Shown here: in pieces, positions 1-54,860 of the stretch
How the letters are laid out: every line of letters begins with the position of its first letter
Position numbering within the stretch: the stretch's first letter is position 1
NCBI GenBank assembly: GCA_004431415.1
Contig: QPMI01000117.1
Location: 186,001 to 250,000 of the forward strand
Reading direction: 5' to 3'
From: Cyanophora paradoxa CCMP329
Lineage: Eukaryota; Plantae; Glaucophyta
DNA: 64,000 bases
Notes under the pieces: generated by a model
The model's input: the letters and a program-made list of their open reading frames with translations, nothing else
Told to the model about the DNA's origin: nothing
Databases searched by the model: none
Translations under genes and position numbers: made by a program

Positions 1-116
1 GCGGGCTTGAAGCCGCCGAGCTCCGGGGGGTACGCTGATTCGGGGTTTCCCTTCACGCCCAGCTTCGCTCGCGGCCGCCCCAGGCCACGAAGCGACCAGC
101 GGCGAAGCGAAATCGC
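1..116. repeat. 3' part of split repeat A, copy 1
   Basis: Exact match to 10714-10829; both copies give the same MKPPSSGGYADSG ORF start in the ORF track. Confidence 0.95.
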
Positions 117-739
117 CACAGCCAGCACTGCAGTCACTCCTAAACAGCCCTGTCGGACCGGCGGCCGCACTTCTCGGCCGTCCCTCCAATTGCACAGAGC
201 TGACCAACTCTGCAGCACCACGGCTCGCCATAGCTGCAGTGGAGCGCGATCCCGCGGCAGCAACTGCGCATGCCTCGATGGCTGGCCGGCGCAAACCCTG
301 TTCCCAGCGATCCTCCCGGAATCGGCCTCGGGCCCCGATTCACGCTTGAATCTGGTTCCTTACTGCCGTGCCGGTACGTGGATTCACGTCCGGGCCCGCC
401 CGCCACGCTCGCATCCCGCGCGCGCTGGCTATCCCGGGGGCCCACCGTCAGTCCGCGGCCGCCGGCTTGCCTATACACTCTATATAAGCGTGTATTGAGA
501 CCCGCCGCGCGATTCCTCCGGTTCCCTGACCAATTCCTGCACGCATGCTCCGGAGCTCCTCGGCGCTCGCACCGGACGTCGACACCGCCGCTGTGCCACG
601 CCGGCGGAGCTCGCGCAGGACTGCCCCGGCCTGCTGGCGCGCGCGCTGCAGACCCACCGCGAAGTCGGGCTTGGATCGTGCCTTCCGCGTGATCCACCGA
701 CGGACGGTGCCCAGCCGCTCGCGCGGCTCGGGGAGGCGA

Positions 740-2010
740 CGGAGTACGGCTCTCGCGTGCGCCTCGCGCTGTGGACGGCCCGCGTGCGCCTCGCGCTGTG
801 GTCCCTGTACTCGGAGTTCGGAGGCCGCGCGCGACTCTCGCTGTGGCCCGATCCCCCCGGCGGATTCCGGCCGCGACCGCGGCCGGCGAACTTCCACCAG
901 GAGCACGGATCTCGCGAGCGCCTCGCTGTGAGATGGGCCCGCGTGCGTTCGTCGCTGTGGGCCCCCGTGCAAGGAGTTCCGGGGCCGCGTGCGCCCCGCT
1001 GTGGCCCCAGACCGCTTCAGCGGCACCAGCCGCTCCCGCGGCCGGCGAACTCCCAACCTGGCCTTCGAATTCGACTCCCGCGTGCGCCTCGCGCTGCGGG
1101 ACGGCCCGCGTGCGCCTCGCGCTGTGGGCCCCCTACTCGGAGTTCGGAGGCCGCGCGCGACTCTCGCTGCGGCCCGCTCCGCCCCCGGCGGACCCCGGCC
1201 GCGCCCGCGGCCGGCGAACTTCGACCAGGAGCACGGGTCTCGCGAGCGCCTCGCTGTGAGATGGGCCCGCGAGCGTTCGTCGCTGTGGGCCCCCGTGCGC
1301 GGAGCTCCGGGGCCGCGTGCGTCTCGCTGTGGCCCCAGAGCTTCACCCCGGAGTACGGCTCTCGCGTGCGCCTCGATCGCTGCGGGACGGCCCGCGAGCG
1401 TGCGCGCTGTGGGCCCTGTACATATATATATATACTCGGAGTTCGGAGGCCGCGCGCGACTCTCGCTGTGGCCCGATCCGCCCCGGCGGACCCCGGCCGC
1501 ACCCACGGCCGGCGAGCTTCCACCAGGAGCACGGATCTCGCGAGCACCTCGCTGTGAGATGGGCCCGCGAGCGTTCGTCGCTGTGGACCCCCGTGCGCGG
1601 AGCTCCGGGGCCGCGTGCGTCTCGCTGTGGCCCCAGATCTAGAGCTTCACCCCGGAGTACGGCTCTCGCGTGCGCCTCGCTCGCTGCGAGACGGCCCGCG
1701 AGCGTGCGCGCTGTGGGCCCTGTACTCGGGTTCGGAGGCCGCGCGCGACTCTCGCTGTGGCCCGATCCGCCCCGGCGGATTCCGGCCGCACCCGCGGCCG
1801 GCGAACTTCCACCAGGAGCACGGATCTCGCGAGCGCCTCGCTGTGAGATGGGCCCGCGAACGTTCGTCGCTGTGGACCCCCGTGCGCGGAGTTCCGGGCC
1901 GCGTGCGTCGCGCTGTGGCCCCAGAGCTTCACGCCGGAGTACGGACCTCGCGTGCGCCCCGCTGCGAGACGGCCCGCGAGCGTGCGCGCTGCGGGCCCCG
2001 GACTCGGAGT
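740..2010. repeat. Tandem array of about four ~290-325 bp units with internal ~25-30 bp subrepeats
   Basis: TTCGGAGGCCGCGCGCGACTCTCGCTG recurs at ~817, 1143, 1442 and 1731; CGCGTGCGCCTCGCGCTGTGGGCCC-like subunits recur within units. Confidence 0.9.
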
Positions 2011-2167
2011 GCGTTACGCTGCGGACTATAGCTACGACTCTCGCTGGCGCGCGCGCTGCGAGTATTAGTCGGCCCGCTGGCGCGTCTCGAGCTCGCTGCG
2101 GACTAGCCGCTAGCGCTAGCGCTGCTGGCGCGACCGCTACAGCCTCGCGATCGATCGCGATCGCAGA

Positions 2168-2260
2168 GTGTTTTGTTTGTTTTTGGTCAATTCTAGTCGA
2201 TTCAAGGATTGACTCGACCTTAAAACAAAAACAAAAACAAAACAAACAAAAACAAAACAA
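2168..2260. repeat. (TTTTG)n and (AAAAC)n low-complexity tracts in inverted orientation
   Basis: GTTTTGTTTGTTTTT at ~2170-2184 and AAAACAAAAACAAAAACAAAACAAACAAAAACAAAACAA at ~2222-2260. Confidence 0.8.
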
Positions 2261-2639
2261 CGGACGTACCCGTTGTACCGGCCGGACTCCGGACTCCGGA
2301 GCCGCCGGACCCGCGGTACCGGTCCCGCGCCGCGCGGTCTCACTGCCGCAGTGCCAGGCCGCTGAGGCGGGCACTTCCGGGGATCCGCTGCCGCAGTGCC
2401 GCCGCTGCGGCGCCGCACGGCATGCGCAGTCTGCAGTGGCAGTACAGCCGCAGTGCCGCAGTGCGAGCTCGAGTCGGCCGGCGCCCGCAGCTGCAGTTGC
2501 CAGGCTGGCGCTTCCGCTACCGCAGTGCTGCCGCTGCCCCAGTGGCGCGTTACGCTGCGGACTACGGTCCCCGCTTGCGCTCTAGATCTCGCTGCGAGTC
2601 GGCCTGCTGGCGACCTTCCGCGCATCCGCGCCGCACCCT

Positions 2640-5600
2640 TGCGCAACCCGGGCCCCCGCACCGCAGCTCGGCTCGCCGCCGCCGCCGGACCTGCCTGCGC
2701 AGGGCGGGCCGGCCGCTGGCCCGCCTGCGGCACTCCCCGGCTGGAGCCCAGGGCTCCACCTCCGTCCCGAGGTCCGAAAACGACCTCGCGCGGCCCCGCA
2801 CCGCCACGCCACCCGCCGCCGCCGCCTGACCTGCTTGCGCGGGCGGGCCGGCCGCTGGCTCGCACGCAGCGCTCCCGGCTGGAGCCGCTGAGCCCAGGGC
2901 TCCGCCTCCGTCCCGAGGTCCGTCACGGCCTCGCGCGGCACCCGCGCCGCCGCTCGACCCGCCGCCGCCGCCTGACCTGCTTACGCAGGGCGGGCCGGCC
3001 GCTGGCTCGCCTGCCGCGCTCTCCGGCTGGAGCCTTGGTCTCCACCTCCGCCCCGAGGTCCGTCACGGCCTCGCGCGGCCCCGTGCCGCCGCTCGACCCG
3101 CCACCGTGGCACCGCCGCCTGACCTGCTTGCACAGGGCGGGCCGACCGCTGGCGCGCCTGCGACGCTCCCCGGCTGGAGCCCAGGGCTCCACCTCCGCCC
3201 CGAGGTCCGAAAACGACCTCGCACGGCCCCGCCCCCCGCGCCACCCGCCGCCGCCGCCTGACCTGCTTGCGCAGGGCGGGCCGACCGCTGGCTCGCCTGC
3301 GGCGCTCTCCGGCTGGAGCCCAGGGCTCCGCCTCCGCCCCGAGGTCCGTCACGGCCTCGCGCGGCCCCCGCGCCGCCGCTCGACCCGCCGCCGCAGCCTG
3401 ATCTGCTTGCGCAGGGCGGGCCGGCCGCTGGCTCGCCTGCCGCGCTCTCCGGCTGGAGCCCTTGGGCTCCACCTCCGCCCCGAGGCCCGTCACGGCCTCG
3501 CGCGGCCCCCGCACCGCCGCTCAACCCGCCACCGTGGCACCGCCGCCTGTCCTGCTTGCGCAGGGCGGGCCGGCCGCTGGCTCGCCTGCGGCGCTCCCCG
3601 GCTGGAGCCCCGGGCCCCACCTCCGCCCCGAGGTCCGAAAACGACTCGCGCGGCCCCACGCCCGCGCTCGACCCGCCGCCGCCGCATAACCTGCTTACGT
3701 AGGGCGGGCCGGCCGCTGGTGCGCATGCAGCGCTCCCCGGCTGGAGCCCAGGGCTCCACCTCCGCCCCGAGGTCCGTCACGGCCTCGCACGGCCCCGCGC
3801 CGCCGCTCGACCCGCCGCCGCCGCCTGACCTGCTTGCGCAGGGCGGGCCGGCCGCTGGCCCGCCTGCGGCGCTCTCCGGCTGGAGCCTTGGGCTTCACCT
3901 CCGCCCCGAGGTCCGTCACGGCCTCGCGCGGCCCCGCACCGCCGCTCGACTCGCCGCCGCCGCCGGACCTGCTTACGCAGGGCGGCCGGCCGCTGGCTCG
4001 CATGCGACGCTCTCGGGCTGGAGCCCTTGGGCCCCACCTCCGCCCCGAGGTCCGTCACGGCCTCGCGCGGCCCCGTGCCGCCGCGCGACCTGCCGCCGCC
4101 GCCTGACCTGCTTGCGCAGGGCGGGCCGACCGCTGGCTCGCCTGCGACATTCGCCGGTTGGAGCCCTTGGGCCCACCTCCACCCCGAGGTCTGAAGCGGC
4201 CTCGCGCGACCCCCGCGCCGCCGCCCGACACACCGCTGCCGCCTGACCTGCTTGCGCAGGGCAGGCCGGCCGCTGGCTCGCCTGCCGCGCTCTCCGGCTG
4301 GAGCCCAGGGCTCCACCTCCGCCCCGAGGTCCGTCACGGCCTCGCGCGGCCCCGCGCTGCCGCTCGACCCGCCGCCGCCGCATAACCTGCTTGCGCAGGG
4401 CGGGCCGGCCGCTGGCTTGCATGCAGCCCTCCCCGGCCGGAGCCTTGGTCTCCACCGCCGCCCCGAGGTCCGTCACGGCCTAGCGCGGCCCCGCGCCGCC
4501 GCTCGACCCTCCGCCGCCGCATAACCTGCTTGCGCAGGGCGGGCCGACCGCTGGCTCGCCTGCGGCGCTCCCCGGCTGGAGCCCAGGGCTCCGCCTCCGC
4601 CCCGAGGTACGTCACGGCTTCGCGAGGCCCCGCGCTGCCGCTCGACACGCCGCCGCCGCCTGACCTGCTTGCGCAGGGCGGGCCGGCCGCTGGCTCGCAC
4701 GCAGCACTCCCCGGCTGGAGCCCAGGGCTCCACCTCCGCCCCGAGGTCCGTCATGGCCTCGCGCGGCCCCGCGCTGCTGCTCGACCCGCCGCCACCACAT
4801 AACCTGCTTGCGCAGGGCGGGCCGACCGCCGTCTCGCCTGCGGTACTCTCCGGCTGGGGCCCAGGGCCCCACCTACGCCCCGAGGTCTGTCACGGCCTCG
4901 TGCGTCCCCGCGCCGCCGCTCGACCCACCGCCGCCGCCTGACCTGCTTGCGCAGGGCGGGCCGGCCACTGGCTCGCCTGCCGCGCTCTCCGGCTGGGGCC
5001 CAGGGCTCCACTTCCGCCCCGAGGTCCATCACGGCCTCGCGCAGCCCCGCGCTGCCGCTCGACCGCCGCCGCCGCATCACCTGCTGGCGCAGGGCGGGCT
5101 GGCCGCTGGCTCGCACGCAGCGCTCCCCGGCTGCGCCCAGGGCTCCACCTCCGCCCCGAGGTCCGTCTCGGCCTCGCGCGGCTTCGGGCTGCCGCTCAAC
5201 CCACCGCCGCCGCATGACCTGCTGGCGCGGGGCTGGCCGGCCGCTGGCTCGCATGCAGCGCTCCCCGGCTGGAGCCCAAGGCCCCACCTCCGCCCCGAGG
5301 TCCGAAAACGACCTCGCGCGGCCCCGCACCGCCGCGCCACCCGCCGCCGCCGCGTAACCTGCTTGCGCAGGGCGGGCCGGCCGCTGGCTCGCACACAGCG
5401 CTCCCCGGCTGGAGCCCAGGGCTCTACCTCCGCCCCGAGGTCCATCACGGCCTCGTGCGGCCCCGCACTGCCGCTCGACCAGCCGCCGCCGCAAAACCTG
5501 CTTGCGCAGGGCGGGCCGTCCGCTGGCTCGCATACAGCGCTCCCCGGCTGGAGCCCAGGGCCCCACTTCCGCCCCGAGGTCCGTCACGGCTTCGCGCGGC

Positions 5601-8600
5601 CCCGCGCTGCTGCTCGACATGCCACTGCCGCCTGACCTGCTTGCGCAGGGCGGGCCGCTGGTGCGCATGCAGCGCTCCCCGGCTGGAGCCCAGGGCCACA
5701 CTTCCGCCCCGAGGTCCGTCACGGCCTCGCGCGGCCCCGCGCTGCTGCTCGACCCGCCGCCGCCCCAGAACCTGCCTGCGCAGGGCCGGCCGCTGGTGCG
5801 CATGCAGCGCTCCCCGGCTGGAGCCCAGGGCTCCACCACCGCCCCGAGGTCCGCCACGGCCTCGCGCTCCCCTGTGCTGCCGCTCGACACGCCGCCGCCG
5901 CATAACCTGCCTGCGCAGGGCGGGCCGGCCGCTGGCTCGTCCGCAGCGCCCCCCGGCTGGAGCTCAAGGCGTTACCACCGCCCAGAGGTCCGTCACGGCC
6001 TCGCCCGACCCCGCGCCGCCGCTCGACCCACCGCCGCCGCCTGACCTGCTTGCGCAGGGCGGGCCGGCCGCTGGCTCGCACACAGCGCTCCCCGGCTGGA
6101 GCCCAGGGCTCTACCTCCGCCCCGAGGTCCATCACGGCCTCGCGCAGCCCCGCGCTGCCGCTCGACCCGCCGCCGCCGCATCACCTGCTGGCGCAGGGCG
6201 GGCTGGCCGCTGGCTCGCACGCAGCGCTCCCCGGCTGCGCCCAGGGCTCCACCTCCGCCCCGAGGTCCGTCTCGGCCTCGCGCGGCTTCGGGCTGCCGCT
6301 CAACCCACCGCCGCCGCATGACCTGCTGGCGCGGGGCTGGCCGGCCGCTGGCTCGCATGCAGCGCTCCCCGGCTGGAGCCCAAGGCCCCACCTCCGCCCC
6401 GAGGTCCGAAAACGACCTCGCGCGGCCCCGCACCGCCGCGCCACCCGCCGCCGCCGCGTAACCTGCTTGCGCAGGGCGGGCCGGCCGCTGGCTCGCACAC
6501 AGCGCTCCCCGGCTGGAGCCCAGGGCTCTACCTCCGCCCCGAGGTCCATCACGGCCTCGTGCGGCCCCGCACTGCCGCTCGACCAGCCGCCGCCGCAAAA
6601 CCTGCTTGCGCAGGGCGGGCCGTCCGCTGGCTCGCATACAGCGCTCCCCGGCTGGAGCCCAGGGCCCCACTTCCGCCCCGAGGTCCGTCACGGCTTCGCG
6701 CGGCCCCGCGCTGCTGCTCGACATGCCACTGCCGCCTGACCTGCTTGCGCAGGGCGGGCCGCTGGTGCGCATGCAGCGCTCCCCGGCTGGAGCCCAGGGC
6801 CACACTTCCGCCCCGAGGTCCGTCACGGCCTCGCGCGGCCCCGCGCTGCTGCTCGACCCGCCGCCGCCCCAGAACCTGCCTGCGCAGGCCGGCCGCTGGT
6901 GCGCATGCAGCGCTCCCCGGCTGGAGCCCAGGGCTCCACCACCGCCCCGAGGTCCGCCACGGCCTCGCGCTCCCCTGTGCTGCCGCTCGACACGCCGCCG
7001 CCGCATAACCTGCCTGCGCAGGGCGGGCCGGCCGCTGGCTCGTCCGCAGCGCCCCCCGGCTGGAGCTCAAGGCGTTACCACCGCCCAGAGGTCCGTCACG
7101 GCCTCGCCCGACCCCGCGCTGCCGCTCGACCCGCCGCCGCCGCATACCCTGCTTGCGCAGGGCGGGCCGGCCGCTGGCTCGTATGCAGCGCTTCACGGCT
7201 GGAGCCCAGGGCTCCACCTCCGCCCCGAGGTACGTCACGGCTTCGCGAGGCCCCGCGCTGCCGCTCGACACGCCGCCGCCGCCTGACCTGCTTGCGCAGG
7301 GCGGGCCGACCGCTGGCTCGCCTGCGACATTCGCCGGTTGGAGCCCTTGGGCCCCACCTCCACCCCGAGGTCTGAAGCGGCCTCGCGCGACCCCCGCGCC
7401 GCCGCTCGACACACCGCTGCCGCCTGACCTGCTTGCGCAGGGCAGGCCGGCCGCTGGCTCGCCTGCCGCGCTCTCCGGCTGGAGCCCAGGGCTCCACCTC
7501 CGCCCCGAGGTCCATCACGGCCTCGCGCAGCCCCGCGCTGCTGCTCGACCCGCCGCCGCCGCATAACCTGCTTGCACAGGGCGGGCCGGCCTCTGGCTCG
7601 CATGCAGCGCTCCCTTACTGGAGTCCAGGGCTCCACCTCCGCCCCGAGGTCCGTCACGGCCTAGCGCGGCCCCGCGCTGCCGCTCGACCCGCCGCCGCCG
7701 CATAACCTGCTTGCGCAGGGCGGGCCGGCCGCTGGCTCGCATGCAGCCCTCCCCGGCCGGAGCCTTGGTCTCCACCGCCGCCCCGAGGTCCGTCACGGCC
7801 TAGCGCGGCCCCGCGCTGCAGCTCGGCGTACCGCCACTGCCTGACCTGCCTGCGCAGGGCGGGCCGGCCGCTGGCTCGCCTGCCGCGCTCTCCGGCTGGA
7901 GCCCTTGGGCTCCACCTCCGCCCCGAGGTCCGTTCACGGCCTCATGCGGCCCTGCACCACCACTCGACCGCCGCCGCCGCATAACCTGCTTGCGCAGGGC
8001 GGGCCGGCCGCTGGCTCGCATACAGCGCCCCCCGGCTGGAGCCCAGGGCTCCACCTCCGCCCCGAGGTCCGAAAACGACCTCGCGCGGCCCCGCACCGCC
8101 GCGCCCCCGCCGCCGCCGCCTGACCGGCTTGCGCAGGGCGGGCCGACCGCTGGCTCGCCTGCGGCGCTCTCCGGCTGGAGCCCAGGGCCCCGCCCCGCCC
8201 CGAGGTCCGTCACGGCCTTGCGCGGCCCCGCGCCGCTGCTCGACCCGCCGCCGCCGCCTGACCTGCTTGCGCAGGGCGGGCCGGCCGCTGGCTCGCATGC
8301 CGCGCTCTCCAGCTGGAGCCCAGGGCTCCACCGCTACCCCGAGGTCCGTCACGGCCTCGCGCGGCCCCGCGCTGCAGCTCGGCGTACCGCCACTGCCTGA
8401 CCCGCTGGCGCAGGGCGGGCCGGCCGCTGGCTCGTCCGCCGCGCTCTCCGGCTGGAGCCCAAGGCTCCACCGCCGCCCCGAAGCCCTTGACGGCCTCGCA
8501 CGGCCCCACTCCACCACCCGGCTTGCCGCCGCCGCCTGACCTACGGGTGCAGGGCGGGCCGGCCGCTGGCCCGCCCACCGCGCTCCTGCTGGAGCTCAAG

Positions 8601-9550
8601 GCTCCGCCACCTCCCCGAGGTCTGCAGCGACCTCGCGCGGCCCGGCGCCGCCGCCCAGCTCGCTGCCTCCGCCTGATTGGCTGGCACAGGGCGGGCCGGC
8701 CCCTAGCCCGCCCGCGGCCGTCGGACGCTTCCTGGCTGGAGCTCAAGGCTCCGCCACCGCCCCAGGGCGGGCCGGCTGGTGGACCGCGCGCAGCGCCTCC
8801 TGCGGTAGCTAAAAGCTCCGCCGCCGCCCGAAGGTCCGTAGCGGCCTTGCGCGGCCCCGCGCGGCCGCTCGACCCGCTACCGCCGTCGGACCTACTCGCG
8901 AAGGGCAGGCCGGTCGCTGGCTCGCCAGCAGCGCTCTCCTGCTGGAGCTCAAGCCTCCACCACCGCCCCGAGGTCTGCAGCGACCTCGCACGGCCCCGCA
9001 CTGCCGCTCGGCTCGCCGCCGCCGCCTCGCCTGCTTGCGCAGGGCGGGCCGGCCTCTGGCTCGCCCGCGTCGCCCCCCTGCTGGAGCTCAAGGCTCCTTC
9101 GCGGCCCGAGGTCCGTCACGACCTCGCGCGGCCCCGCGCCGCCGCTCGACCCGCCGCCTCCGCCCGACCTGCTGGCGCAGGGCGGGCCGGCCCTGGCTCG
9201 CCAGCCGCGCTCTCCTGCTGGAGCTCATGGCCCCATCACCGCCCCGGGGTCCGTCACGGCCTCGCGCGGCCCCGCGCTGCCGCCGCCTCGCCTGCTGGCG
9301 CAGGGTGGCTGACCGCTGGCTCGCCCACGGTGCTGTCCCACGGGCGCTCCAGGCCCTGAGGCCCCGCGACTGCTCCCGCGGTCTTATGCGGCCCCCACGC
9401 CTCCGCGCGGCGCGCTTCCGCCGCCTAACCTGCTTGCACAGGGCAGGACGGTGGTGGGCTCACTTTCGGTGCTCACCGGCTGGGATGGTTTTAGATTCCG
9501 CCGCGGCCCCGAGGTCCGTAACGGCCTCGCGCGACTTCACGCCGACGCGC
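2640..9550. repeat. ~139-bp GC-rich tandem array (~50 units) with higher-order duplication and degenerate ends
   Basis: Unit GACCTGCTTGCGCAGGGCGGGCCGGCCGCTGGCTCG...GGAGCCCAGGGCTCCACCTCCGCCCCGAGGTCCGTCACGGCCTCGCGCGGCCCCGC. ORF-track starts step by 139 (4530, 4669, 4808, 4947). Identical ORFs are offset by 1104 bp (5077 vs 6181). Confidence 0.95.
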
Positions 9551-9960
9551 AGTGCGACCGCCTTGCCCGCCCTCCACCCGTAGCGCGCCCCTGGCCCGCA
9601 CCGCCCAGCATGACTTGTCGGCGGCGGGGATCTGGCGGCGCAACTATCAAGCGCCGCCCCGGTTCGTCGACTGTCCCATAGGGGTACGACGAGAACCCCC
9701 CAGCCTTCTGTGCCGGCTCGTTCCCTCGGGCTTCTTGGCCCGCCCCGGCCCATGTTGTTGTCCGAATTCACGCTCTCTGCCCGTCCCTCCTACAGCGCAG
9801 TGCGCTGGGGATAGGGCTCAGCGTCCGAGACACGTTGGGGTGGCGGGGAGGAGGAAAGAGAGGGGGGGGGGGGCAGGAGGAGGGTGGATCAACCCTCGCC
9901 CTCTTGATCACTTTTGTCCTTATGTATGCTATTCTGGCTGGCTGTGACCTGACTCTTGTT

Positions 9961-10512
9961 TGGTAGGGGGTACTGCATTCGTGCTGCGTTCGCTACGCTC
10001 ACCCCGCGGCCTCCGGCGGCGGTACCCGGCTTCGGATCCCCGAACCCGGAAGAAACCGCGTACCCTCCCCGGGGTACGCCGTTCGCCCCAACCGGCCCAC
10101 AAGGCGCGGCCCGAGGCCGAACGCGTACCCCGGAGAGGGTACGGCGTCAGAGCGGCCCCGATCAAGTGTACCCCCGAGCGGGGTACCCCGATCGGCCCCG
10201 CGACGGCCCGAGCGGAGTACCCCGAGCGGGTACACCGTCTCGACCCGCAACGGCCCTCCCCGGGGTACAAGCGCCTAGCACGCTTACCCCGGAGAGTTCT
10301 TGTTCCGGAACTCGCAAGGGCGAGGCCGGAATGGCATACGGCGATCCGCCCTGGTCGATCGCCAACGTATTATGATACGTGGTTCCCGGGAAAGCAGCCT
10401 TGAGCTGCCGTACCTCAGGGCCCAACCCGATGCGCTATCCCGTGCATCTAGCTAAGTAGTGTCAGGCGTAAGATAGCTAGGTCTTCTGCATTCGAATGAA
10501 GCGAGGCGTAAA
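9961..10512. repeat. Split repeat B, copy 1
   Basis: TGGTAGGGGGTACTGC...GAAGCGAGGCGTAAA, repeated at 11478-12036. Confidence 0.95.
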
Positions 10513-10829
10513 TCGGGATTTGCGCTCTCAATGCGTAAATCGAGTTTTGCGCCGACGGAATGCGAACAAAGAAGACCGTAGCCGAGCGCCAGGCACGAAA
10601 GAGCTGAGCGACTCGCTAGCCGCGGAAGCGGCGCGAGGCGAGCACGGGATTAGCAGCAGGCTGCTGCGAGCGCCCCGCAAGGGACTAGCTGAGCTAGCCG
10701 TTGGGCCGAGCCGGCGGGCTTGAAGCCGCCGAGCTCCGGGGGGTACGCTGATTCGGGGTTTCCCTTCACGCCCAGCTTCGCTCGCGGCCGCCCCAGGCCA
10801 CGAAGCGACCAGCGGCGAAGCGAAATCGC
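10513..10829. repeat. Split repeat A, copy 2 (left boundary inferred from the end of B1)
   Basis: Its last 116 bp match window positions 1-116. Confidence 0.75.
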
Positions 10830-11477
10830 TCCCGCCCACCTCCCCGCGATTTTTCCTTCCGGGGCGCCGAACCTCGCCACCCAGCGAGCCCCGGCGCCGC
10901 GAAAAGTTCGCGCAAAAAGGCAATGCATACGGCGACCAGCGCCAGCGTTCGCCGAGGGTATTATAATACGTGGTTCCTTGCCGTCTCCTGTGCACACGGT
11001 TCCGGATGTTACTCCCGCTCGGTGCCGGCCACCAGCGCGGACGTGGTCGTGCACAGCTGATCCGTGGTAATTTACAATGGTTCCGTCGAAGATTCGGGCA
11101 CGAACCGCGCAGACTCGGTGTGCCGGTCGTCATTCGTGTTTCCACGCGCGTCCGCTGGGCCCACTTGTGCCGGGCCGGGGTCCAGCGCGCCCCCAAGAAA
11201 CAGTCGCGCGGCTTCGTGGAGAATCTCGAGTTTTCCCCGCTGGGTTTTACCCTGTTTTCCTCTGGACCCGTGGGTGCCGAGCCGGGGTCCAGCGCGCATG
11301 ACCGTTACGCGGTTTTCCCGCGGTAACTTGCTGGTTTTCGAGTCTGCCGCCCCGGCGCGGGGGGAGACTTCGCGCATGATTCGGAGTCCTGTTGGTTTTT
11401 GATGAGCCTCGGTTGTCGTACGTTGTACGACTCCTTGGTCTCATGGTCGTCTGCGGACGACGGGCACGCTACGCGTG

Positions 11478-12036
11478 TGGTAGGGGGTACTGCATTCGTG
11501 CTGCGTTCGCTACGCTCACCCCCGCGGCCTCCGGCGGCGGTACCCGGCTTCGGATCCCCGAACCCGGAAGAAACCGCGTACCCCTCCCCGGGGTACGCCG
11601 TTCGCCCCAACCGGCCCCACAAGGCGCGGCCCGAGGCCGAACGCGTACCCCGGAGAGGGGTACGGCGTCAGAGCGGCCCCGATCAAGTGTACCCCCGAGC
11701 GGGGTACCCCGATCGGCCCCGCGACGGCCCCGAGCGGAGTACCCCCGAGCGGGGTACACCGTCTCGACCCGCAACGGCCCTCCCCGGGGTACAAGCGCCT
11801 AGCACGCTTACCCCGGAGAGTTCTTGTTCCGGAACTCGCAAGGGCGAGGCCGGAATGGCATACGGCGATCCGCCCTGGTCGATCGCCAACGTATTATGAT
11901 ACGTGGTTCCCGGGAAAGCAGCCTTGAGCTGCCGTACCTCAGGGCCCAACCCGATGCGCTATCCCGTGCATCTAGCTAAGTAGTGTCAGGCGTAAGATAG
12001 CTAGGTCTTCTGCATTCGAATGAAGCGAGGCGTAAA
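11478..12036. repeat. Split repeat B, copy 2 (right terminus of the element)
   Basis: Near-identical to 9961-10512; identity ends after GCGTAAA. Confidence 0.95.
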
Positions 12037-13620
12037 GGGAGAGAGCTCTGTTCTGAAGCGCATCACCATGGAGCCACTTGGGGCTTTGATGAACTCCACC
12101 AGCTTGCCGTTGGCCGTCGCGTCGTCCAGGATCGGCACCATGATCGTCCGCAGGCCTCTCGGGTCGGGCTGGGCGTCCGAGCAGGACAAGCTCGGATTCG
12201 CGCCAATGAGGCGCGGGATGATCGCTGCGGCCCGGACCGCGAGGGTCGACTTAGACCTCAGCTCGTTCGCGCGGGCGCGTGCACGCAGGGCTCACCGCCG
12301 GCGACTGCTTTCACTTGCTGCGCATCCGCCTGGTCGCGGATTCCGCGCCCTTGGTGCGGACTCGCCGTGACGGCGGCGAGCAGCTCCGGCGTCATTCACT
12401 AGTAGATAGGGGGGGGAAGTGACATTATTCTGACATTACTCTGACATTATTTAAAATGTCAGAATGAATGACATTATTCTGACATCATTCTGACATTACT
12501 AGACAGCGCGAGACTTGACCTTCAAATGCTAGAATCAGCTCGGAAACTAGGCCGGCGGGCGTCCCCGGCCCAACATTTAGCGTCGGGCGGTGCTCTTTCG
12601 ATGATGAGTGTCCGCTTGCGCCGGTTTAATGTCAGAATAATGTCATCATGCCCGATATTATCTTGACTTTACTTTGACAATATATAGCCTCTTCATACTA
12701 AACATCCGTACTATACGCGCGCGGCCGCCCGGGCGGCCCCGCAAGGAGATTTCGGGCCGGCGCTCCCCGGACGCCGGCCGCCGCGCCCGGCGTATGGATG
12801 GGCCGTGTCACAGGAAGCCGCGCACAGGAAGCGGCCCGGTGCGCCTCCGGTGGCCGCCCTAGGAGATAATGTCAGAATAATTTCAGATTAAGGTCAGGTG
12901 AGGGGTGTTCGGATGGGGGCGATCCGAGGTACGTTGCAGCGCGCATTGAAGAGACATTTAATATCATGTATAAAGGTTCAAAACGGTTGAGAGCGGCGCC
13001 GTGGGCTGGCGAGCGCGCACCAGAAAAGCGCGGAGCTTCGCTGCAGTTTCGCTTGGACAGATCGCCTCCGAAATCCCGCTGCTCCCGCGCTGCTCCCGGC
13101 CGGACGCTCGCCGCCGCCCTTAGCGTCCCCCGCCCCGCCCCAGCCTTAGCATTCCGGCCCGTCCGGCCTCGGCCTTAGCGCCCCCTCTCCGCCCTGGCCT
13201 TAACGCCTGGCTGGCTGGCTGGCTGGCTGATGTTCTCCTCTTTTGCAGGAGGTGGATCGGAAGAGAGGCGCGGGCGGACGACGGGCGCGGGCGCGGGCGG
13301 CGGGCGCAGTACTATTTAGACAGTAGTATGTTGTTAGATTGATGTTATTGTGACATCAACATGACATTATATCTGATATCACTCTGACAGTATTCTGACA
13401 TTTTGGGATAATGTCAGAATAATATCAAGTCGGACAAAAATAATGTCAGAATAATATCGGGTCTGACATTATAAATAATGTCAGAGTACTGTCAGAATAA
13501 TGTCACTTCCCCCCCCTATCTACTAGTGATTGGTTTGTCGATGAAGTGCTGATCGAGAAGCGCCAGCGCGGGCCCGAAGGCGGCTCCAGCCGTGGTCGCC
13601 AACGACGCGAGGAGCGCCAT
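12037..13620 (-). pseudogene. Gene of unknown function disrupted by two mobile elements
   Basis: Removing the CACTA element and one ATT restores an open frame from ATG 13620: MALLASLATTAGAAFGPALALLDQHFIDKP^MTPELLAAVTASPHQGRGIRDQADAQQVKAVAG, then a GT-AG intron (12295-12225), then AIIPRLIGANPSLSCSDAQPDPRGLRTIMVPILDDATANGKLVEFIKAPSGSMVMRFRTELSPF, which runs into repeat B2. Confidence 0.65.
12397..13528. mobile_element. Non-autonomous CACTA (EnSpm/CMC) DNA transposon, 1132 bp
   Basis: TIRs CACTAGTAGATAGGGGGGGGAAGTGACATTATTCTGACA and TGTCAGAATAATGTCACTTCCCCCCCCTATCTACTAGTG. 3-bp TSD ATT at 12394-12396 and 13529-13531. Many subterminal TGACATTATTC/AATGTCAGAAT repeats in both orientations. Confidence 0.95.
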
Positions 13621-14062
13621 TCTTCAGCCGCGCACTGCGCGGGCGGCTAACGTGATCAGCGACCGAGCGCCGCCGGGCGCCGGCGCCGCGTGCGGCTGCA
13701 TGTGCGCACATGAGTTCGTGCGGTTCTCGTCGACTCCGCCCGGCCGTCCGCTACGAGCCTGCGAGTCTGCGAGTCGGCGAAGTGGTCGGTTGGACGTCGG
13801 TCTGCGGCACAGCTGACAGACGCAATGCTGCTGCAACGTCGACAGACGCACTGCTGCCAGGCTGGTCGATCTGCTGCCGGCCGGGCTTTTAATTTGTGAG
13901 AACTGTGACCAGCTGGGGGGTACAGGTTGGTGCAGTGAAATGCTATCCCCATGCACGCTGTTTGTGACAGTTTGTCATCAGAATGAATTCATCCGATGCA
14001 CTTGTAATATCGAATTGAAGAGTGATAAACAGAGATCTAGACACGTGCGGGGGCCCGCCTCT

Positions 14063-17000
14063 CTAGACGGCGCGCCAGCCGGGGCCGACCTGCACGCCGT
14101 CGGCCGCGCAGCAGGGGCAGCCGCCGTGGCCGTGGCCCGCCCCGTGCCCCGCGAACTGTGCCGCCGGCAGCGGCGGGCCGACGGGCGCCGCGTATCCGTA
14201 CGCGTCCGCTGCCGCCGGCGCCGGCGGGGGCATCGGCGCCGCCGCGGGGGCCGCCTCCGGTAGTAGTAGGCCGGGGGCGCGGCGGGGCGGGGCCGGCGCC
14301 GGCGAGGGGCGCGGCGCTGGGCGGGGCCCGGCGGCGGGGCCGGGGAGCGGCCGCGGCGCGGGGCGGGACCGGCGGAGGCGGCACGGGCGCCGCGCTGGCG
14401 GAGGCGCTCGTTCTCGAGCTTCAGGCGGAGCACCTCGCTCTGCTCCGCCCCGGCCCGCGTCAGACTTGCCAGAAAGACGCGCCCCCGGGATCCGAACCTG
14501 GGACATCTGGGCGGCGATGCGGTCCGCGCGGGCCTTGGCGACGTTCGCGGCCTGGTGCGCCCTCGGCAGCACGCTGTGCGCGTACCTGCGCCCCACCGGG
14601 ACGACGTCGGGCTCGACCCGAGGGCGAGGGCTTCGATCCGCCGGGGCGGGGCGGGGCGGGGTGTACCGGTCGATGGTGGACATGAGGCGGCGCCGGGCGT
14701 TCAGCTGCGCGTCCAGCGACTTGCGCAGGTCCTCCACCTGCCGGCGGCCCTCGGGAAAAGGCTGGGCGGGGCGGGGGCGGGGGAAAGCCGACCTCTCCGG
14801 CCTCTCGGGCGAGGCGCTCCTGGACGCCGTACCCCGCGGCGCGCTCGCGCTCCAGCTGGCGCTCGAGGGCCCGCACGCGGTCGCGGCTCGCCTCGAGCTG
14901 CGCGGCCAGGTCCACCGCGCGCGCCCCCTGCTCGTCCACCTCCCCCTGCATCAGCTCCAGCTGCCGCATCAGCCCCGCGTTCTGCGCAGAGCCGGGCGTC
15001 AGAGGACGAAATCAAACAAAGAGGCGAGCGCGCGCGCCTGGCCGGCGAGGCCGTTGAGCTGCTCGGCGGCGGCGTCGCCGTCGAGGTCCGACTGGCGGAC
15101 CCGCTCGTGCAGCGCCGCCTGCTGCGCCTGCAGCCGCCGCAGCTCCTCCCGCAGCCGCTCCTGCAAAGAGAAAGAAGAAGATTAGATCCGAGCGCGCCGC
15201 GCAGGGTTCGAATTCGTTGGGCGTGCGGACGTGGAGCTTGGCGGCGGCCTGGAGCTCCATTTCGGCCTCGGTGCGGCGCGCCTGCTCCTCCCGCACCCGC
15301 TCCTTCAGCGCCTCGCACACCCGCTGCTGCGCGTCCAGCTCCCCTTCCAGCCGCCCCGCCTCCTCTGCCCCCCCCGCCCGCCCTCAGCCTTCGGCCGCCT
15401 GCTGACCCTGCCCCGCGCACCCTTCTCGCGGTCCCCGCGGCGCTCCGACGCGTCCCGGACCTTGCGGATCTGACCGCGCGGTCAGGTCCAAAAGGAAAGG
15501 GGGCGGGACCAGGGCCGGGCCTCGTCCTTGAGGCGGCGAATGGACTCGGACTGGCGCTCGCCCTTCTGGCGGAGCTCCTCCTGATCCGCCTTGGACCGCT
15601 CCAGCAGCTCCCGGTACGCCTCGAACTGGGCGCGCGCGGGGCCGGGGCCGGCGGCGGTCAGCGAGCTCTGCCTCCGCGCAGCGCAGCGGTCTGAGGGGGC
15701 GGGGGCGGACCACGCGCTCGAGCTCGGCCTTCTCGTCCTCCAGCTGCCGGATCTTGTCCAGCACGAAGCCTGCGCGCGAGCTTGACAAGGGCCGGCCCGG
15801 CCGCCCTGAGGCGGACGACAGACGGACCCTGGTCGACCCGCGCGATCGCCTCGCGCTGCACGTCCGCCTGCAGCCGCGCCCGCCGGTCCCCGCCCAGCGG
15901 CCCCGCCGCCGCGGTCCTCGGCCCGGGGCTCGGCGAGCGGCCGCGCGCGACCGGAGCTGCGGCTGGGGCGGGGAGGGCGGCGGCGGCGCCGAAGGAGAGG
16001 GCGTGGAGGTCGTTGAGGTAGGCGCCGGAGGCCCAGCCGCCGAAGACGACGACTCGGGAGCCGCCGTCCAGAAGCACCGCAGTGTGCGCGTAGCGCGCCC
16101 GCGGCGCCCGCCCGTGCACGCGCGGCGCCACCTGCGCCGCCCCCCGCTCTGCTCTGCCCTCCGCTCGGCTCTGCACGGGGTTACTAGTCACTCGCGCACC
16201 CAGCTCATGACGTCGGCGTCGAGGACGGTGACGTCGTCGAGGCAGGCGGTGTTGCCACGCGCCGTGTCGCGCCCGCCGTAGACGACGAGCGTGAGGGGCC
16301 CGCCCCAGGCCGCCGCCGTCGCCGTGTGGCGCGCCCGCGGGCGGGGCACCTGCCCGTCCGCCACCTCGGCCGCGAAGCGGTACGCCTCCGTGTCGAAGAC
16401 GAAGGCGCAGTCCAGCGCCGCGCGGTCCGCCGCCGAGCCGTTCCACCCGCCGTAGATCAGGATCTGGGGCGCGCCCGTTCCTTCCTCTGCTTCCCCGTAC
16501 CCCGCGCGGGGTGCAGGATTGTTATCATTATTCGCACCTCGTGGCTGGAGATGGGCGTCGCGCTGTGGCCCGCCCGCGCGGGGAACTGCTCCCCCGTCGT
16601 CCGCACCTTCCGCCACTCGTACGCCGCTGCGGCGCGGCGCGGCCGGTAGACCGTCGGCGGAAGTGGGCTCCGAAGAGGAGCGGAAGTGGGGGGGGGGGTA
16701 CCGAGGTCCAGGAACCAGACGTCGTCGAGGTACGTCTGGCCGTCGTACCCCCCGATGACATACACGCGGGAGCCGTGCAGGGTCGCCGTGTGGTGCGCCC
16801 GCCCCGACGGCGGCCGCCCGCGGACCTTCAGCGGCGCCCAGCGCATGCTCTCTGCGGTCCCGGATCGGCCCTGGCAGGCCGGCCGGCCGGACTGACGGGG
16901 CGGGGCGCGGCGGACCGACGTCGAGGAGCCATGCGTCGTTGAGGAGGGGCCCGGCGCCCCAGCCACCGAAGACGAGCATGTGCTTGGCATCCACCATCAC

Positions 17001-17784
17001 CGCCGCGTGCCCGTACCGCGCCGGCGGAGTCGGTCCCGACGCCGCGATCCGCTCCCACTTCATCGTGTCTGCGCCCGGAGGGGATGGATGATGATGAGCC
17101 CGGCCGCCGGGCGAGCGCGCAGGGGCGTGCGGGCGTGCGGGCGAGAGGGCGGCGGGGCGGACCGGTGGGGAGCAAGTAGAGATCAGAGAGGTGGCCCTCG
17201 CCGTTGGAGAGCATGTCGAAGCCCCAGCCGCCGAAGACGAGCATCTGGGAGTCGCCCAGCGCCACCGCCGAGTGCCCGTAGCGCGGCGAGGGCAGCGACC
17301 CCAGCGCGGCAATCTCCGACCAGCGCAGCCCGAGCGCGTCCGTCGCCTCCTCTGCGGGGCGCGGGCGCGGCGCCGGCTCAGAGCGCGACTGACGTGTCCG
17401 GAGCCCTTCAGTCGAGCTCGGGCGGGGCGGGTCCCAGCGCTCACCAGTTCGGTTCGGGTGCCATTCCTGCTCGACCCGCGCGCGCCGACGCTCGGCCCGC
17501 GGCTCCTCGGCCGGCGCGTACTCCTCCTCGTACACTTCGTCCCCGTAGTAGTCCTCCTCGTCCTGGGCGAGCTTCCTGAGCTTCTTCTGGGACTGGAAAA
17601 CGATGTAGCTAACGCACCTCTTCCCGCGCTCGCTGGTAGACTGGCTGAAGCTGCGGGCGGTCGCCGCCGGGTTGCTGGGGTTGAGCTGGCGGCGAGGCGC
17701 GAATCGGAAGTACCGGAAGCGTACCGTTTGCCTCGGAGCGCCTCCGCCGCTTCTATACATGTGACTGTGAGTAACCCGGCTCAT
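14063..17784 (-). CDS. Multi-exon Kelch-repeat beta-propeller protein with C-terminal coiled coil and Pro/Ala-rich tail
   Basis: Six Kelch motifs across exons (PSPRYGHSAV...VFGGW, PARYGHAAV...VFGGW, GRAHHTAT...VIGGY, ARAGHSAT...IYGGW, RARHTAT...VYGGR, ARYAHTAV...VFGGW). Heptad-rich exons follow (VLDKIRQLEDEKAELE, RQLELMQGEVDEQ). The last exon appears to need a 1-nt frame correction near 14260. Confidence 0.85.
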
Positions 17785-17940
17785 CTCCGCTAAGCAACGG
17801 CCCTCTTTGGTGGGTACGCGAAATGCAATCCATGACCCGTACCCCGGGGTCTTGGTAGCAGAGCGCTCGAGCGAGCTTCCGAACAAGAACCGAGCGCGCC
17901 AGCGCGCAGCGCGTCGGCTCTCTGAGCCGACGGCAGCGGG
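17785..17940. promoter_or_regulatory. Putative bidirectional promoter / 5' UTRs (156 bp between divergent ATGs)
   Basis: Kelch ATG (-) at 17784 and VPS13 ATG (+) at 17941. Confidence 0.55.
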
Positions 17941-50145: not shown

Positions 50146-53175
<3,030 letters not shown>

Positions 53176-53258
53176 CCGGATGTGCACTGTCCAACTGTCC
53201 AATCCACATGCATATGCACTGCACTGTACAATTGACTGCCTCGCGTACCCCTGCCTGA

Positions 53259-54860
53259 CTAGTAGTGGATGGTGTCCTTGCAAACTGGCCGCACGACGCC
53301 CTCCTCGCCCTTGGGGTACAGCTTCTTGACGAGCCTCCGCGAGAGCACGGCGGGGGGTACGGGCCCCGGACCGCCCTCCCTCCGCGCCAGCCGCTCGATC
53401 GCGACCTGGGAGGGGGGATGAGGAAGGGGGTACGGAGACGAATGGAGGAGGGGGGTACGTCGCACCACTGCCGCGGCGCGAAGGCTGCACTCGGCGAGCC
53501 CGCCGGCCTGGATCGATTCGCCGGCCTGCGCGTGCGTGAGCCGCGCGGGGGTACGACGGCGCCGGGGAAGGGGGGTGCGGGCCTGCAGGGCCTTCTGCAG
53601 GTCCGCGTCGACGATCTGCAGCACCCCCTCCCGCATGAGCACCGCCACGAGCTTGTCTGCAAAGGGGGTACGCGTACGCCGCGTCAGCGCGGGCGAGGGG
53701 TACGCGGGGCGGGGCGGGGCGCGGCGGGCGCGCCGTCGGCAAGGGCCGTGAAGCGGTCGACGTCGGCGGCGTCGAGCCGGAAGCAGGGGTCCCTGGCAGG
53801 CCCGCCCCGTCATCCAGCGCGGCGGAGGAACAGGAGCGGCGCCGGCGCACCGGTCGCCGACGTTGGCGGCGAGGTCGAGGACGGCCGCCTGGACCTTACG
53901 GTGGAGTGCCAGCCTGCGAGCCGCTGCTCGCCAAGGGGCGCGGAGGGGCGAAGTGGAAGAGAAGGCGGCCCCGCACGCCACGCGCCTGAGGCCGGCGACG
54001 TCGTACGAGTCGTCGGCGGCGGTCGGGAGGGCCTTCACGAGCTCCTCGACGAGGGCGGCGGCGATGGGCCCGCCCTGCCGCGTCGCCCGCGCCGCCGCGC
54101 CCCGCAGCAGAGCAGCGAAATCCGCGCACTGCCTCGCGCGCAGCTTCGCCCCGCACGACTCCATCACCTGCGCTCGCCGGTCGGGGCGGGAGCTTCGAGT
54201 TCGGAGGCGCGCGCCTGCAGGAGGCGGTCCGCGAAGCGGCGGACGCGGCTGTCGACGAGCGTCTTGATCGCCGCGTTGCCGTCCAGCGGCGCCTCCACGC
54301 GGAAGGGGATCTGGAAGTGCTGCTCCACGTCGTTCACGGAGACGCGCGCCAGCGTCTCCGCGTCCAACTTCGCCCCGCTGATCGTCATCGAGATGAGCCC
54401 GAAGAGCTGTGTGTGTGTGTGTGTGTGTGCGCGCGCGCGCGCCGTCAGCGCGGGCGGGAGCGCCCCGGAAGCGCGCGCGGCTCGGTGCGGACGGTGGAGT
54501 TTTTGGGCCCGCGCTTGCACGTCTGGTCGAGCTCGGGGCCCCACGAGGCGCCGAAGCTGATCAGGTTCTTGAGCACGTAGAAGTCAATCTCGGCGTCGAG
54601 CTGCGGGCCACGTTAGCGCGGCGTCAACGACCGCGCCAATGGCCGCGGCCGGGGAGGCGCACCCCGTCAAAGTTGAGCGGGAGTGGCGTGAGCTCCCACT
54701 TCGCGTGCGCCTCCTTCGCCGACCCGACCTCGCGCTCCCAGAGGGAGTCGAGCTTCTCCTCGTCGATGCGCACGAGCGCTTGGGCCTTCGGCGACGCCGC
54801 GAGCGCCTCGCACGACGCGCGGACGGCCTCCAGCACGGACGCCGGCGCCGCGCCCGCCAT
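53259..54860 (-). CDS. Divergent queuosine-salvage (DUF2419 / QNG1-like) protein
   Basis: VRASCEAL...VRIDEEKL; NLISFGASW (cf. LNFGSG); LHRKVQA (cf. FYKRAQ); FTALADDKL (cf. LTxFADY); GVL; ECSLRAAAV (cf. EVEIRA); C-terminus CKDTIHY* (cf. RTIFY*). Confidence 0.7.

What the first reader, a model, noticed from the sequence alone, without database searches (positions are those of the whole stretch)
1..12036. >12-kb non-coding split-direct-repeat element (A...B-A-spacer-B) whose cargo is satellite DNA
Seen: 1-116 = 10714-10829, 9961-10512 matches 11478-12036, B1 abuts A2, a ~650-bp unique spacer precedes B2, and the interior is almost all tandem repeat with no RT, RNase H or recombinase ORF. Known: this split layout, including the spacer and an internal tandem array, is that of Chlamydomonas TOC1 and PAT-like tyrosine-recombinase retrotransposons, which insert without a TSD. 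Inference: a young, unusually large non-autonomous family that disperses a 139-bp satellite, mobilised in trans by an autonomous partner not in this window. The near-identical repeat copies suggest recent activity.
Basis: partly seen in the sequence, partly recalled or inferred. Interest (0 to 1): 0.8.

Follow-up and report, generated by a model that had tools for sequence, protein, structure and literature searches.

The report
Non-coding split-repeat retroelement carrying satellite arrays
This is one copy of a multi-copy, protein-less mobile element with the split-direct-repeat ends typical of tyrosine-recombinase retrotransposons (TOC1/PAT type), most of whose interior is tandem repeat; it is a well-formed new example of a known kind.

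Summary
A (1-116) equals 10714-10829 at 100%. B (9961-10512) equals 11478-12036 with no substitutions, only seven one-base homopolymer gaps that look like assembly noise. B1 abuts A2, and 648 unique bases separate A2 from B2. About 80% of the 9.8-kb interior is tandem repeat: a roughly 290-300-bp repeat of about 4 copies and a 139-bp repeat of about 47 copies.

Contigs from two public DNA runs break at the A end and at the B start and end. In one run a contig also begins exactly at the predicted A start. Their depth puts A and B at about 25-50 times single copy and the spacer at about half that, so roughly 10-20 elements, each with two A, two B and one spacer. No reverse transcriptase, RNase H, recombinase or gag domain was found in the element or elsewhere in the window.

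The best reading is a young non-autonomous split-direct-repeat retroelement (DIRS order, PAT/TOC1-like) whose internal arrays grew within the element lineage.

Not tested:
- the left end and the absence of a target-site duplication, because both lie outside the window
- the autonomous partner
- kinship to TOC1
- the organism, which stayed coded

The scan noted this same stretch before (s1-509662). Verdict: new member of a known kind, modest interest.

The parts
1..116 (+). A1, the 3' 116 bases of the left terminal repeat. Its first ~201 bases lie left of the window.
   Evidence: 100% identical to 10714-10829. Similarity stops at 116/117.
117..739 (+). Left unique interior with no recognisable coding. 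Holds a TATA-like CTATATAAG near 480.
   Evidence: Sequence read. ORFs 7-495(+) and 143-697(-) have no Pfam hit. The A-to-interior junction letters CACAGCCAGCACT appear as the loose end behind 10829 in runs X1, X9 and X15.
740..2010 (+). Tandem repeat of about 290-330 bp, about 4 copies, 74-96% alike.
   Evidence: the repeat finder families D5, D7, D8. TRF period 289 at 1433-2010. Self-blast 83-92%.
2011..2653 (+). Unique interior with short palindromes and an AT-rich hairpin (about 2168-2262).
2654..9283 (+). 139-bp tandem array of about 47 monomers. 139 is not a multiple of 3. Monomers are mostly 85-92% alike and edge monomers about 80%. One 8-monomer block (about 5000-6100) is duplicated at about 6104-7200 at 99-100%.
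   Evidence: TRF, the repeat finder D1-D4, offset scan and chunk blast.
9284..9960 (+). Right unique interior. Its first ~250 bases are decayed satellite monomers (about 68-72%). A polypurine run lies at about 9838-9890.
   Evidence: blastn of 'post' against the window. Sequence. Depth 870-1700 in X1, close to that of the spacer.
9961..10512 (+). B1, the internal copy of repeat B. It carries 7 homopolymer under-calls relative to B2.
   Evidence: Short-read contigs lie on B2 rather than on B1 across 10099-10412.
10513..10829 (+). A2, the full-length internal copy of repeat A (317 bp). It starts TCGGGATTTGCGC.
   Evidence: Its 3' 116 bases equal A1. X9 contig 20 starts exactly at 10513, and a variant contig in X1 and X9 begins at the homologous base with TCGGGGTTTGCGC.
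10506..10555 (.). The B|A junction lies in an imperfect palindrome, GCGTAAA|TCGGGA|TTTGCGC. The motif recurs 27 bp later as GCGTAAATCGAGTTTTGCGC. Candidate recombination site; this is inference only.
   Evidence: Read. Folding of 10490-10570 is not better than shuffles (z -1.1), so the palindrome is weak evidence on its own.
10830..11477 (+). Spacer between A2 and B2, unique within the window but multi-copy in the genome. 10925-10977 resembles B 11858-11910 (80%) around the palindrome CGTATTATAATACG.
   Evidence: Depth 1135-1488 in X1 and 75 in X9, about half that of A and B.
11478..12036 (+). B2, the right terminal repeat (559 bp), starting TGGTAGGGGGTAC and ending GCGAGGCGTAAA. It holds four GTACCCC-N5-GGGGTAC hairpins at 11578-11757.
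   Evidence: DNA fold of 11560-11800 gives z -6.4, with 0 of 200 shuffles as stable. Contigs end exactly at 12036 in X1, X9 and X15. The spacer contig in X1 ends 30 bases into B, at 11507.
12037..12392 (-). Host flank: a minus-strand reading frame (P-loop-like) that runs straight into the end of B2.
   Evidence: Depth drops about 26-fold across 12036|12037 in X1 (3671 to 140) and about 41-fold in X9 (195 to 4.7).

Best explanation
This is one copy of a non-autonomous retroelement of the split-direct-repeat type (DIRS order; the PAT/TOC/kangaroo, Ngaro and VIPER layout). It would be about 12.2 kb long if A1 is complete.

Shown here:
- the architecture A1-interior-B1-A2-spacer-B2
- identity of the repeat pairs
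- lack of any recognisable protein domain
- a family size of roughly 10-20 copies
- family boundaries that coincide with the ends of A and B

Inferred from the published model for such elements. A full-length RNA is reverse-transcribed by RT/RNase H supplied in trans by an autonomous relative. The internal B1-A2 junction serves as the template that restores and joins the two ends. The joined form is then integrated at the B|A junction by a tyrosine recombinase, without a target-site duplication.

The two tandem arrays arose from the element's own internal sequence, as with the internal array recalled for TOC1. They are copied along with it. After insertion they keep changing by unequal exchange, as the 99-100% identical 1.1-kb duplicated block shows.
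For: Layout and identity.

SDR definition, 'A1-internal-B1-A2-B2, other configurations exist, no TSDs': PMC8969392. PAT superfamily including TOC elements and kangaroo: PMC3266345. The model requires near-identical A1/A2 and B1/B2 at insertion: PMC6681497.

Multi-copy, from per-contig depths:
- In X1: B 3671, A 3110, spacer 1135-1488, right interior 871, against 70-140 for flanking single-copy contigs.
- In X9: B 195, A 161, spacer 75, against about 5.
- In X1, A (3110) is about the spacer path (1488) plus an equal A-to-interior path.

Boundaries, from contig ends and loose ends:
- Contigs stop at 12036 and restart at 12037.
- A contig starts at 10513.
- The X9 spacer contig begins 30 bases before 10829 (the X1 one 21 bases before), and the X1 spacer contig ends 30 bases after 11478; 30 bases is what a k=31 graph gives at branch points.
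- The only reported alternative continuation after A is the window's own 117-129.

Shared private variants: at 11794 (X1 and X9) and 11804 (X1 only) all covering contigs read G. Both B1 and B2 of this copy read A.

Non-coding.

Array older than the insertion: monomers differ by 8-15% while the terminal repeats differ by 0%.
Against: - The left end is outside the window. The start of A1, the left flank and the absence of a TSD are unseen, and a B copy upstream of A1 cannot be excluded directly.
- The B:A:spacer depth ratio is 2.6-2.8 : 2.1-2.4 : 1, somewhat above the 2:2:1 expected.
- No element with RT/RH/YR and these ends was seen, and none could be searched for, because no genome of this organism was available.
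- A graph branch needs only two contexts. Copy number is shown; dispersal to many different loci is inferred.
- All runs were contigs, not reads, so the long-range link from A1 across 9.8 kb of repeats to B1 rests on the assembly alone.
- An unchecked scan note (s1-509868) reports an SDR element in this genome with RNase H but no recombinase. If that is the partner, the integration step is unknown.
Confidence: 0.75

Rival explanations
1. This is a composite repeat block and not a discrete SDR element. B-A would be an ordinary LTR or another repeat unit. The right end would be a partial tandem duplication (1.37 units) of a 1524-bp B-A-spacer unit lying next to unrelated satellite arrays in repeat-rich DNA.
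For: B1 and B2 are exactly one 1524-bp period apart (D6). B starts with TG and ends purine-rich. The B:A:spacer depth is nearer 2.7:2.3:1 than 2:2:1, which leaves room for an extra B. The left end is unseen.
Against: A1 is followed by different sequence from A2, so this is not a simple tandem unit. The sequence upstream of B1 and that upstream of B2 are unrelated yet have similar copy number, as expected for one fixed unit. Depth falls to flank level exactly at 12036. A ends in CGC rather than CA. If many-unit arrays of B-A-spacer existed, the depth ratio would approach 1:1:1.
Confidence: 0.13
2. This is an assembly artefact. An error-prone long-read assembly has mis-joined or collapsed copies of a repeat family across the satellite array, so the 12-kb unit does not exist as drawn.
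For: The window shows systematic homopolymer under-calls. The window begins inside A1. A 1.1-kb block of the array is duplicated at 99-100%. No contig spans the array.
Against: Three local junctions are corroborated by contigs from independently sequenced runs: A to interior as a 13-letter loose end behind 10829, and A2-spacer and spacer-B2 by contigs that reach about 30 bases across. The B1-A2 and B2-flank junctions show only as contig ends that meet there, and no contig is listed across interior-B1. Monomers differ by 8-15%, enough for long reads to anchor.
Confidence: 0.06
3. This is a DNA-level mobile repeat that spreads without reverse transcription, for example by reintegration of extrachromosomal circles, as proposed for mobile satellites such as MSAT-11_cRei of Chlamydomonas.
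For: De novo insertions of a satellite without TE hallmarks are documented, and their mechanism is called unclear (PMC9940879; bioRxiv 10.1101/2022.05.23.493040). The interior here is 80% tandem repeat.
Against: This element does have TE hallmarks: defined unique ends in the SDR arrangement, which is described only for YR retroelements.
Confidence: 0.06

Closest known systems
TOC1 of Chlamydomonas reinhardtii (non-autonomous DIRS/PAT-type element, dependent on TOC3)
   Same: Both are non-autonomous retroelements with split direct repeats. TOC1 is described as a non-autonomous version of the YR-encoding TOC3 (PMC5613634; PMC9940879). From my own memory of Day et al. 1988 and Day & Rochaix 1991, not checked here, TOC1 also has unique sequence between the internal repeat and the right end, and an internal 76-bp tandem array.
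   Different: This element is about twice as long: about 12.2 kb against 5.7 kb (TOC1 length from memory). Its repeats and spacer are larger (A 317, B 559, spacer 648). It has two arrays (139 bp x ~47 and ~300 bp x ~4) filling 80% of the interior. No TOC1 sequence was available, so sequence kinship is untested. The organism was not identified.
PAT-like, kangaroo, Ngaro and VIPER elements (SDR-bearing YR retrotransposons)
   Same: They share the A1...B1-A2...B2 order. Intra-element repeats are identical in young copies (PMC6681497; PMC3266345).
   Different: Those are defined by their gag, RT/RH and YR genes; this element encodes none. It cannot be placed in a superfamily, which is done by RT/RH/YR phylogeny.
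Non-autonomous transposable elements with internal tandem arrays; TE-derived satellites
   Same: A mobile, protein-less element whose interior is an expanded tandem repeat. Other first-stage notes on this genome describe a foldback and a CACTA element enclosing satellite arrays (unchecked).
   Different: Here the carrier is an SDR retroelement, not a DNA transposon or Helitron. The array makes up more than half of the element.
MSAT-11_cRei 'mobile satellite' of C. reinhardtii
   Same: Repeat DNA that appears at new loci as kilobase-scale insertions (PMC9940879).
   Different: MSAT-11 has a 1.9-kb monomer and no TE features. This element has unique SDR termini.

Membership tests
Split-direct-repeat YR retrotransposons (DIRS order: PAT-like/Ngaro/VIPER) | Terminal layout A1-internal-B1-A2-B2 | tested here: met
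   A 648-bp spacer lies between A2 and B2 ('other configurations exist', PMC8969392). The first ~201 bases of A1 lie outside the window.
Split-direct-repeat YR retrotransposons (DIRS order: PAT-like/Ngaro/VIPER) | A1/A2 and B1/B2 (near-)identical in young copies | tested here: met
   0 substitutions in 116 + 552 bases.
Split-direct-repeat YR retrotransposons (DIRS order: PAT-like/Ngaro/VIPER) | No target-site duplication | not testable with these tools
   The left flank is outside the window, and read laying was limited to one call.
Split-direct-repeat YR retrotransposons (DIRS order: PAT-like/Ngaro/VIPER) | Encodes gag, RT/RNase H and a tyrosine recombinase; for a non-autonomous member, shares its ends with an element that does | tested here: not met
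   There are no such domains in the element or the window, so it is not an autonomous member. The partner could not be searched for, because no genome of this organism was available. The protein word search with the one element ORF tried, and the first DNA pattern scan, found nothing; the second pattern scan gave only chance matches.
Split-direct-repeat YR retrotransposons (DIRS order: PAT-like/Ngaro/VIPER) | Multi-copy family whose copies end at the same bases | tested here: met
   A and B are 25-50 times single-copy depth. Contig ends fall at 10513, 10829, 11478 and 12036 in X1 and X9 between them. This is indirect evidence, because the flanks of other copies were not seen.
TOC1/TOC3 family of Chlamydomonas | Sequence similarity to TOC1 (X56231) or TOC3 | not testable with these tools
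   No algal genome or repeat library is among the collections, and the original TOC1 papers are not held.
LTR retrotransposon derivative (LARD/TRIM) | Two complete direct LTRs at the ends, TG...CA, PBS after the 5' LTR, PPT before the 3' LTR | tested here: not met
   The ends are different repeats (A on the left, B on the right). A ends in CGC. No TGG-type primer site follows A1. The polypurine run lies 70 bases before B1, and none precedes B2.
Plain satellite or segmental duplication | Repeats explained by local tandem duplication, single locus | tested here: not met
   A1 and A2 have different right neighbours. The unique parts (spacer and 9284-9960) are themselves about 6-20 times single-copy depth.

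The most novel reading that the evidence does not exclude
The family is a working vehicle for satellite dissemination. Each retrotransposition would plant a kilobase-scale 139-bp array at a new locus, giving a concrete mechanism for de novo satellite seeding. Its integration might also not use a tyrosine recombinase at all, if the RNase H-bearing SDR element noted elsewhere in this genome (s1-509868, unchecked) is its partner and truly lacks one.
Probability: 0.12. Interest if true: 0.6.

Novelty: new member of a known kind. Interest (0 to 1): 0.3.

Why it matters
How satellite arrays reach new chromosomal sites is poorly understood; the Chlamydomonas v6 genome paper calls the mechanisms generally unclear. 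A young retroelement family of roughly 10-20 copies, more than half of it a 139-bp array, would be a tractable case. Array length and monomer order could be compared between copies to ask what is inherited through an RNA copy and what changes afterwards.

It also matters for annotation. Such copies are easily split into 'satellite' plus orphan repeats, and this one interrupts a reading frame.

As a type it is not new. It has the TOC1/PAT layout at about twice the size.

Tried and rejected
- Organism identification failed. Run names are coded. Protein word searches with a Kelch ORF and an element ORF gave nothing. An exact-protein look-up gave nothing. The ESM Atlas gave only generic Kelch clusters. 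Words such as Chlamydomonas or TTTTAGGG occur in no scan note. A genome size near 100-120 Mb and many resequencing runs are compatible with a model green alga, but I do not claim a species.
- Metagenome scan with the last 25 bases of B: 0 hits.
- Metagenome scan with the degenerate B|A junction 20-mer: 45 gut-bacterial contigs of about 50% GC matching only 20-22 bases. I rejected these as chance.
- Rfam at gathering thresholds and tRNA scans of the whole window found nothing.
- The search of earlier findings by sequence with B was blank.
- The original TOC1 papers and the Poulter & Butler review are not held. TOC1's repeat sizes and its 76-bp array are therefore from memory.
- Junction palindrome as a structured site: the fold is no better than shuffles (z -1.1), so it is kept only as a sequence observation.
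- TGTAA polyadenylation signal: none on the + strand of the element. This is uninformative at 75% GC.
- RNA evidence: X15 and X18 are only guessed to be RNA. They hold a few short contigs (9201-9783 diverged, 10760-10829, 11815-12036, 11178-11401). I draw no conclusion on expression from them.


Full report
**Observation**

The repeats are real and far beyond chance. blastn of the parts against the window gives 1-116 = 10714-10829 at 100% (E 9e-57). It gives 9961-10512 = 11478-12036 at 98.7% over 559 columns (E 0). There are no further copies of A, B or the 648-bp spacer (10830-11477) in the 64 kb.

The pairwise alignment shows that B1 and B2 differ by no substitution. All seven differences are single bases missing from C or G runs in B1. 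Short-read contigs lie on B2 rather than B1. They also add single bases at several homopolymers between 9104 and 9861, at some of them in all of the covering depth. The window therefore comes from an assembly that under-calls homopolymers, and B1 = B2 is the fair reading.

A1 is cut by the window edge. Similarity of A1 and A2 stops at 116 / 10829, after which A1 runs into the interior and A2 into the spacer.

**Interior**

TRF and the repeat finder show two arrays:
- A 139-bp array from 2654 to 9283 (43.4 + 3.8 copies).
- An array of about 290-330 bp, 4 copies, at about 740-2010.

Together these are about 7.9 of 9.8 kb. 139 is not a multiple of three.

Best matches between 400-base stretches of the array, taken away from their own position, are 85-92% identical. 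The last monomers are about 80%. The array fades into 9284-9533, which is still about 70% like the monomers. One block of eight monomers (about 5000-6100) is repeated at about 6104-7200 at 99-100%.

So the array looks home-grown from the element's own sequence and older than this insertion. It has kept changing by unequal exchange, unless that block is an assembly artefact.

**Coding capacity**

Ten ORFs of the element gave no Pfam hit even at E<=1. I then scanned the 149 longest stop-free segments of the window that lie outside the 139-bp array (at least 152 aa). They hit only Kelch, ABC1, HisKA and a BCS1 lid domain. There was no reverse transcriptase, RNase H, integrase/recombinase or gag. 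The longest non-tandem stretches of the element are 620-680 bp, so there is no room for such genes. Rfam and tRNA scans found nothing.

**Is it a family with these ends?**

One search for sequencing runs found 14 DNA runs of one coded organism, with about 100-120 Mb of contigs each, holding 72-79% of the words of 9400-12392. I laid the contigs of two of them (X1, X9) and two possible RNA runs on 9000-13700.

Per-contig depths in X1:
- B (11736-12036): 3671
- A (10674-10829): 3110
- spacer: 1488 and 1135
- right interior (9279-9688): 871
- flank 12037-12425: 140
- a 5.3-kb contig from 13500: 70.6

Per-contig depths in X9: B 195, A 161, spacer 75, flank 4.7.

A and B are therefore about 25-50 times single copy and the spacer about half that. 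This fits roughly 10-20 units, each with two A, two B and one spacer. In X1, A (3110) is about the spacer path (1488) plus an equal second path. The only reported alternative continuation behind 10829, in X1, X9 and X15, is CACAGCCAGCACT. That is exactly the window's 117-129.

The contig ends fall where the repeats end:
- Contigs stop at 12036 and new ones start at 12037.
- An X9 contig starts at 10513. A variant A contig in both runs starts at the homologous base (TCGGGGTTTGCGC...).
- The X9 spacer contig starts 30 bases before 10829 (the X1 one 21 bases before), and the X1 spacer contig ends 30 bases after 11478. Thirty bases is what a k=31 graph gives at branch points.

Finally, at 11794 (X1 and X9) and 11804 (X1 only) all covering contigs read G, where both B1 and B2 of this copy read A. 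The two B copies of one element therefore resemble each other more than they resemble the family majority.

Limits of this evidence:
- These are contigs, not reads.
- A branch needs only two contexts, so copy number is shown but dispersal to many loci is inferred.
- The link across the array rests on the assembly.

**What it is**

The layout is the split-direct-repeat (SDR) arrangement. [quoted passage not shown] It is found in PAT-like, TOC, kangaroo, Ngaro and VIPER elements (PMC3266345; PMC6681497; PMC13465315).

The reverse-transcription model for these elements implies that A1/A2 and B1/B2 are near-identical at insertion (PMC6681497). That matches the 0 substitutions and the shared private variants seen here. 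TOC1 of Chlamydomonas is the classic non-autonomous case, dependent on the recombinase-encoding TOC3 (PMC5613634; PMC9940879).

I therefore read 1-12036 as a young copy of a non-autonomous SDR retroelement, about 12.2 kb long if A1 is complete. Transcription, reverse transcription in trans, use of B1-A2 to restore the ends, and recombinase-mediated insertion are all inferred and were not observed.

**Details that may bear on mechanism (sequence observations only)**

- The B|A junction sits in an imperfect palindrome, GCGTAAA|TCGGGA|TTTGCGC, and the motif recurs 27 bases later. This is the shape of a recombinase core site. As a fold, however, it is no better than shuffles.
- B holds four GTACCCC-N5-GGGGTAC hairpins and folds far better than shuffles (z -6.4).
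- B and the spacer share a 54-base motif around CGTATTATAATACG.

**Rivals**

- A composite block with B-A as an LTR and a partial 1524-bp tandem unit is not excluded, because the left end is unseen and B is slightly over-represented. However, A1 and A2 have different right neighbours. The sequences before B1 and B2 are unrelated yet equally abundant. Depth drops to flank level exactly at 12036.
- Misassembly is unlikely for the A-to-interior, A2-spacer and spacer-B2 junctions, which independently sequenced runs corroborate over 13-30 bases. The other junctions show only as contig ends, and the 12-kb span remains unverified.
- A DNA-level 'mobile satellite' like MSAT-11_cRei fits poorly, because that satellite lacks TE features.

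**What could not be done**

- The organism stayed coded and could not be identified.
- No algal genome or repeat library is among the collections, so other copies, their flanks, the partner element and any kinship to TOC1 could not be examined.
- Two metagenome pattern scans gave nothing or only chance 20-mers in gut bacteria.
- TOC1's repeat sizes and 76-bp array are from my memory of Day et al. 1988 and Day & Rochaix 1991; those papers are not held.
- If the organism has a curated repeat library, this family may already be listed there.

**Verdict**

This is a new member of a known kind, and interest is modest at 0.3. Its main value is as a clean case for asking how tandem arrays travel with retroelements.

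Noticed in passing
window 12393-13532: A non-autonomous CACTA/EnSpm-type element. It has 71-nt terminal inverted repeats (96%), ends CACTAG...CTAGTG, is flanked by ATT on both sides (3-bp TSD), and carries subterminal AATAATGTCAG repeats.
   Followed up: partly
window 12037-12392 and 13533-13640, minus strand: A P-loop-like reading frame, split by the CACTA element and cut off by B2 at 12036. In X1 its contig has twice the depth of a neighbouring 5.3-kb contig. In X9 a 495-base contig covers it with 105 letters off the window, which could be an empty site or a paralogue.
   Followed up: partly
whole window, e.g. 48709-49261, 50773-51510, 53002-53703: GGGGTAC/GTACCCC occurs 87 times against 5.6 expected (0 of 100 shuffles reach it). 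In the minus-strand ABC1-kinase gene it often sits just before intron 3' ends, as ...CGTACCCCCC...CAG. It may be a lineage-specific intron motif.
   Followed up: partly
window 9104-9861 and 9961-10512: The assembly systematically misses single bases in homopolymers compared with short-read contigs and with B2. Reading frames in this window should be treated with care; the Kelch gene at 16191-18168 (minus strand) changes frame.
   Followed up: partly
window 2100-2262: Inside the 75% GC interior lies a run of short perfect palindromes (GCTAGCGCTAGC, GCGATCGATCGC) and an AT-rich hairpin of (GTTTT)n / (AAAAC)n arms.
   Followed up: no
window 11178-11401 (spacer): A run labelled as a different organism (X18, possibly RNA) holds one 224-base contig identical to the spacer and nothing else of the stretch. 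This may be contamination, mislabelling or a shared element.
   Followed up: no
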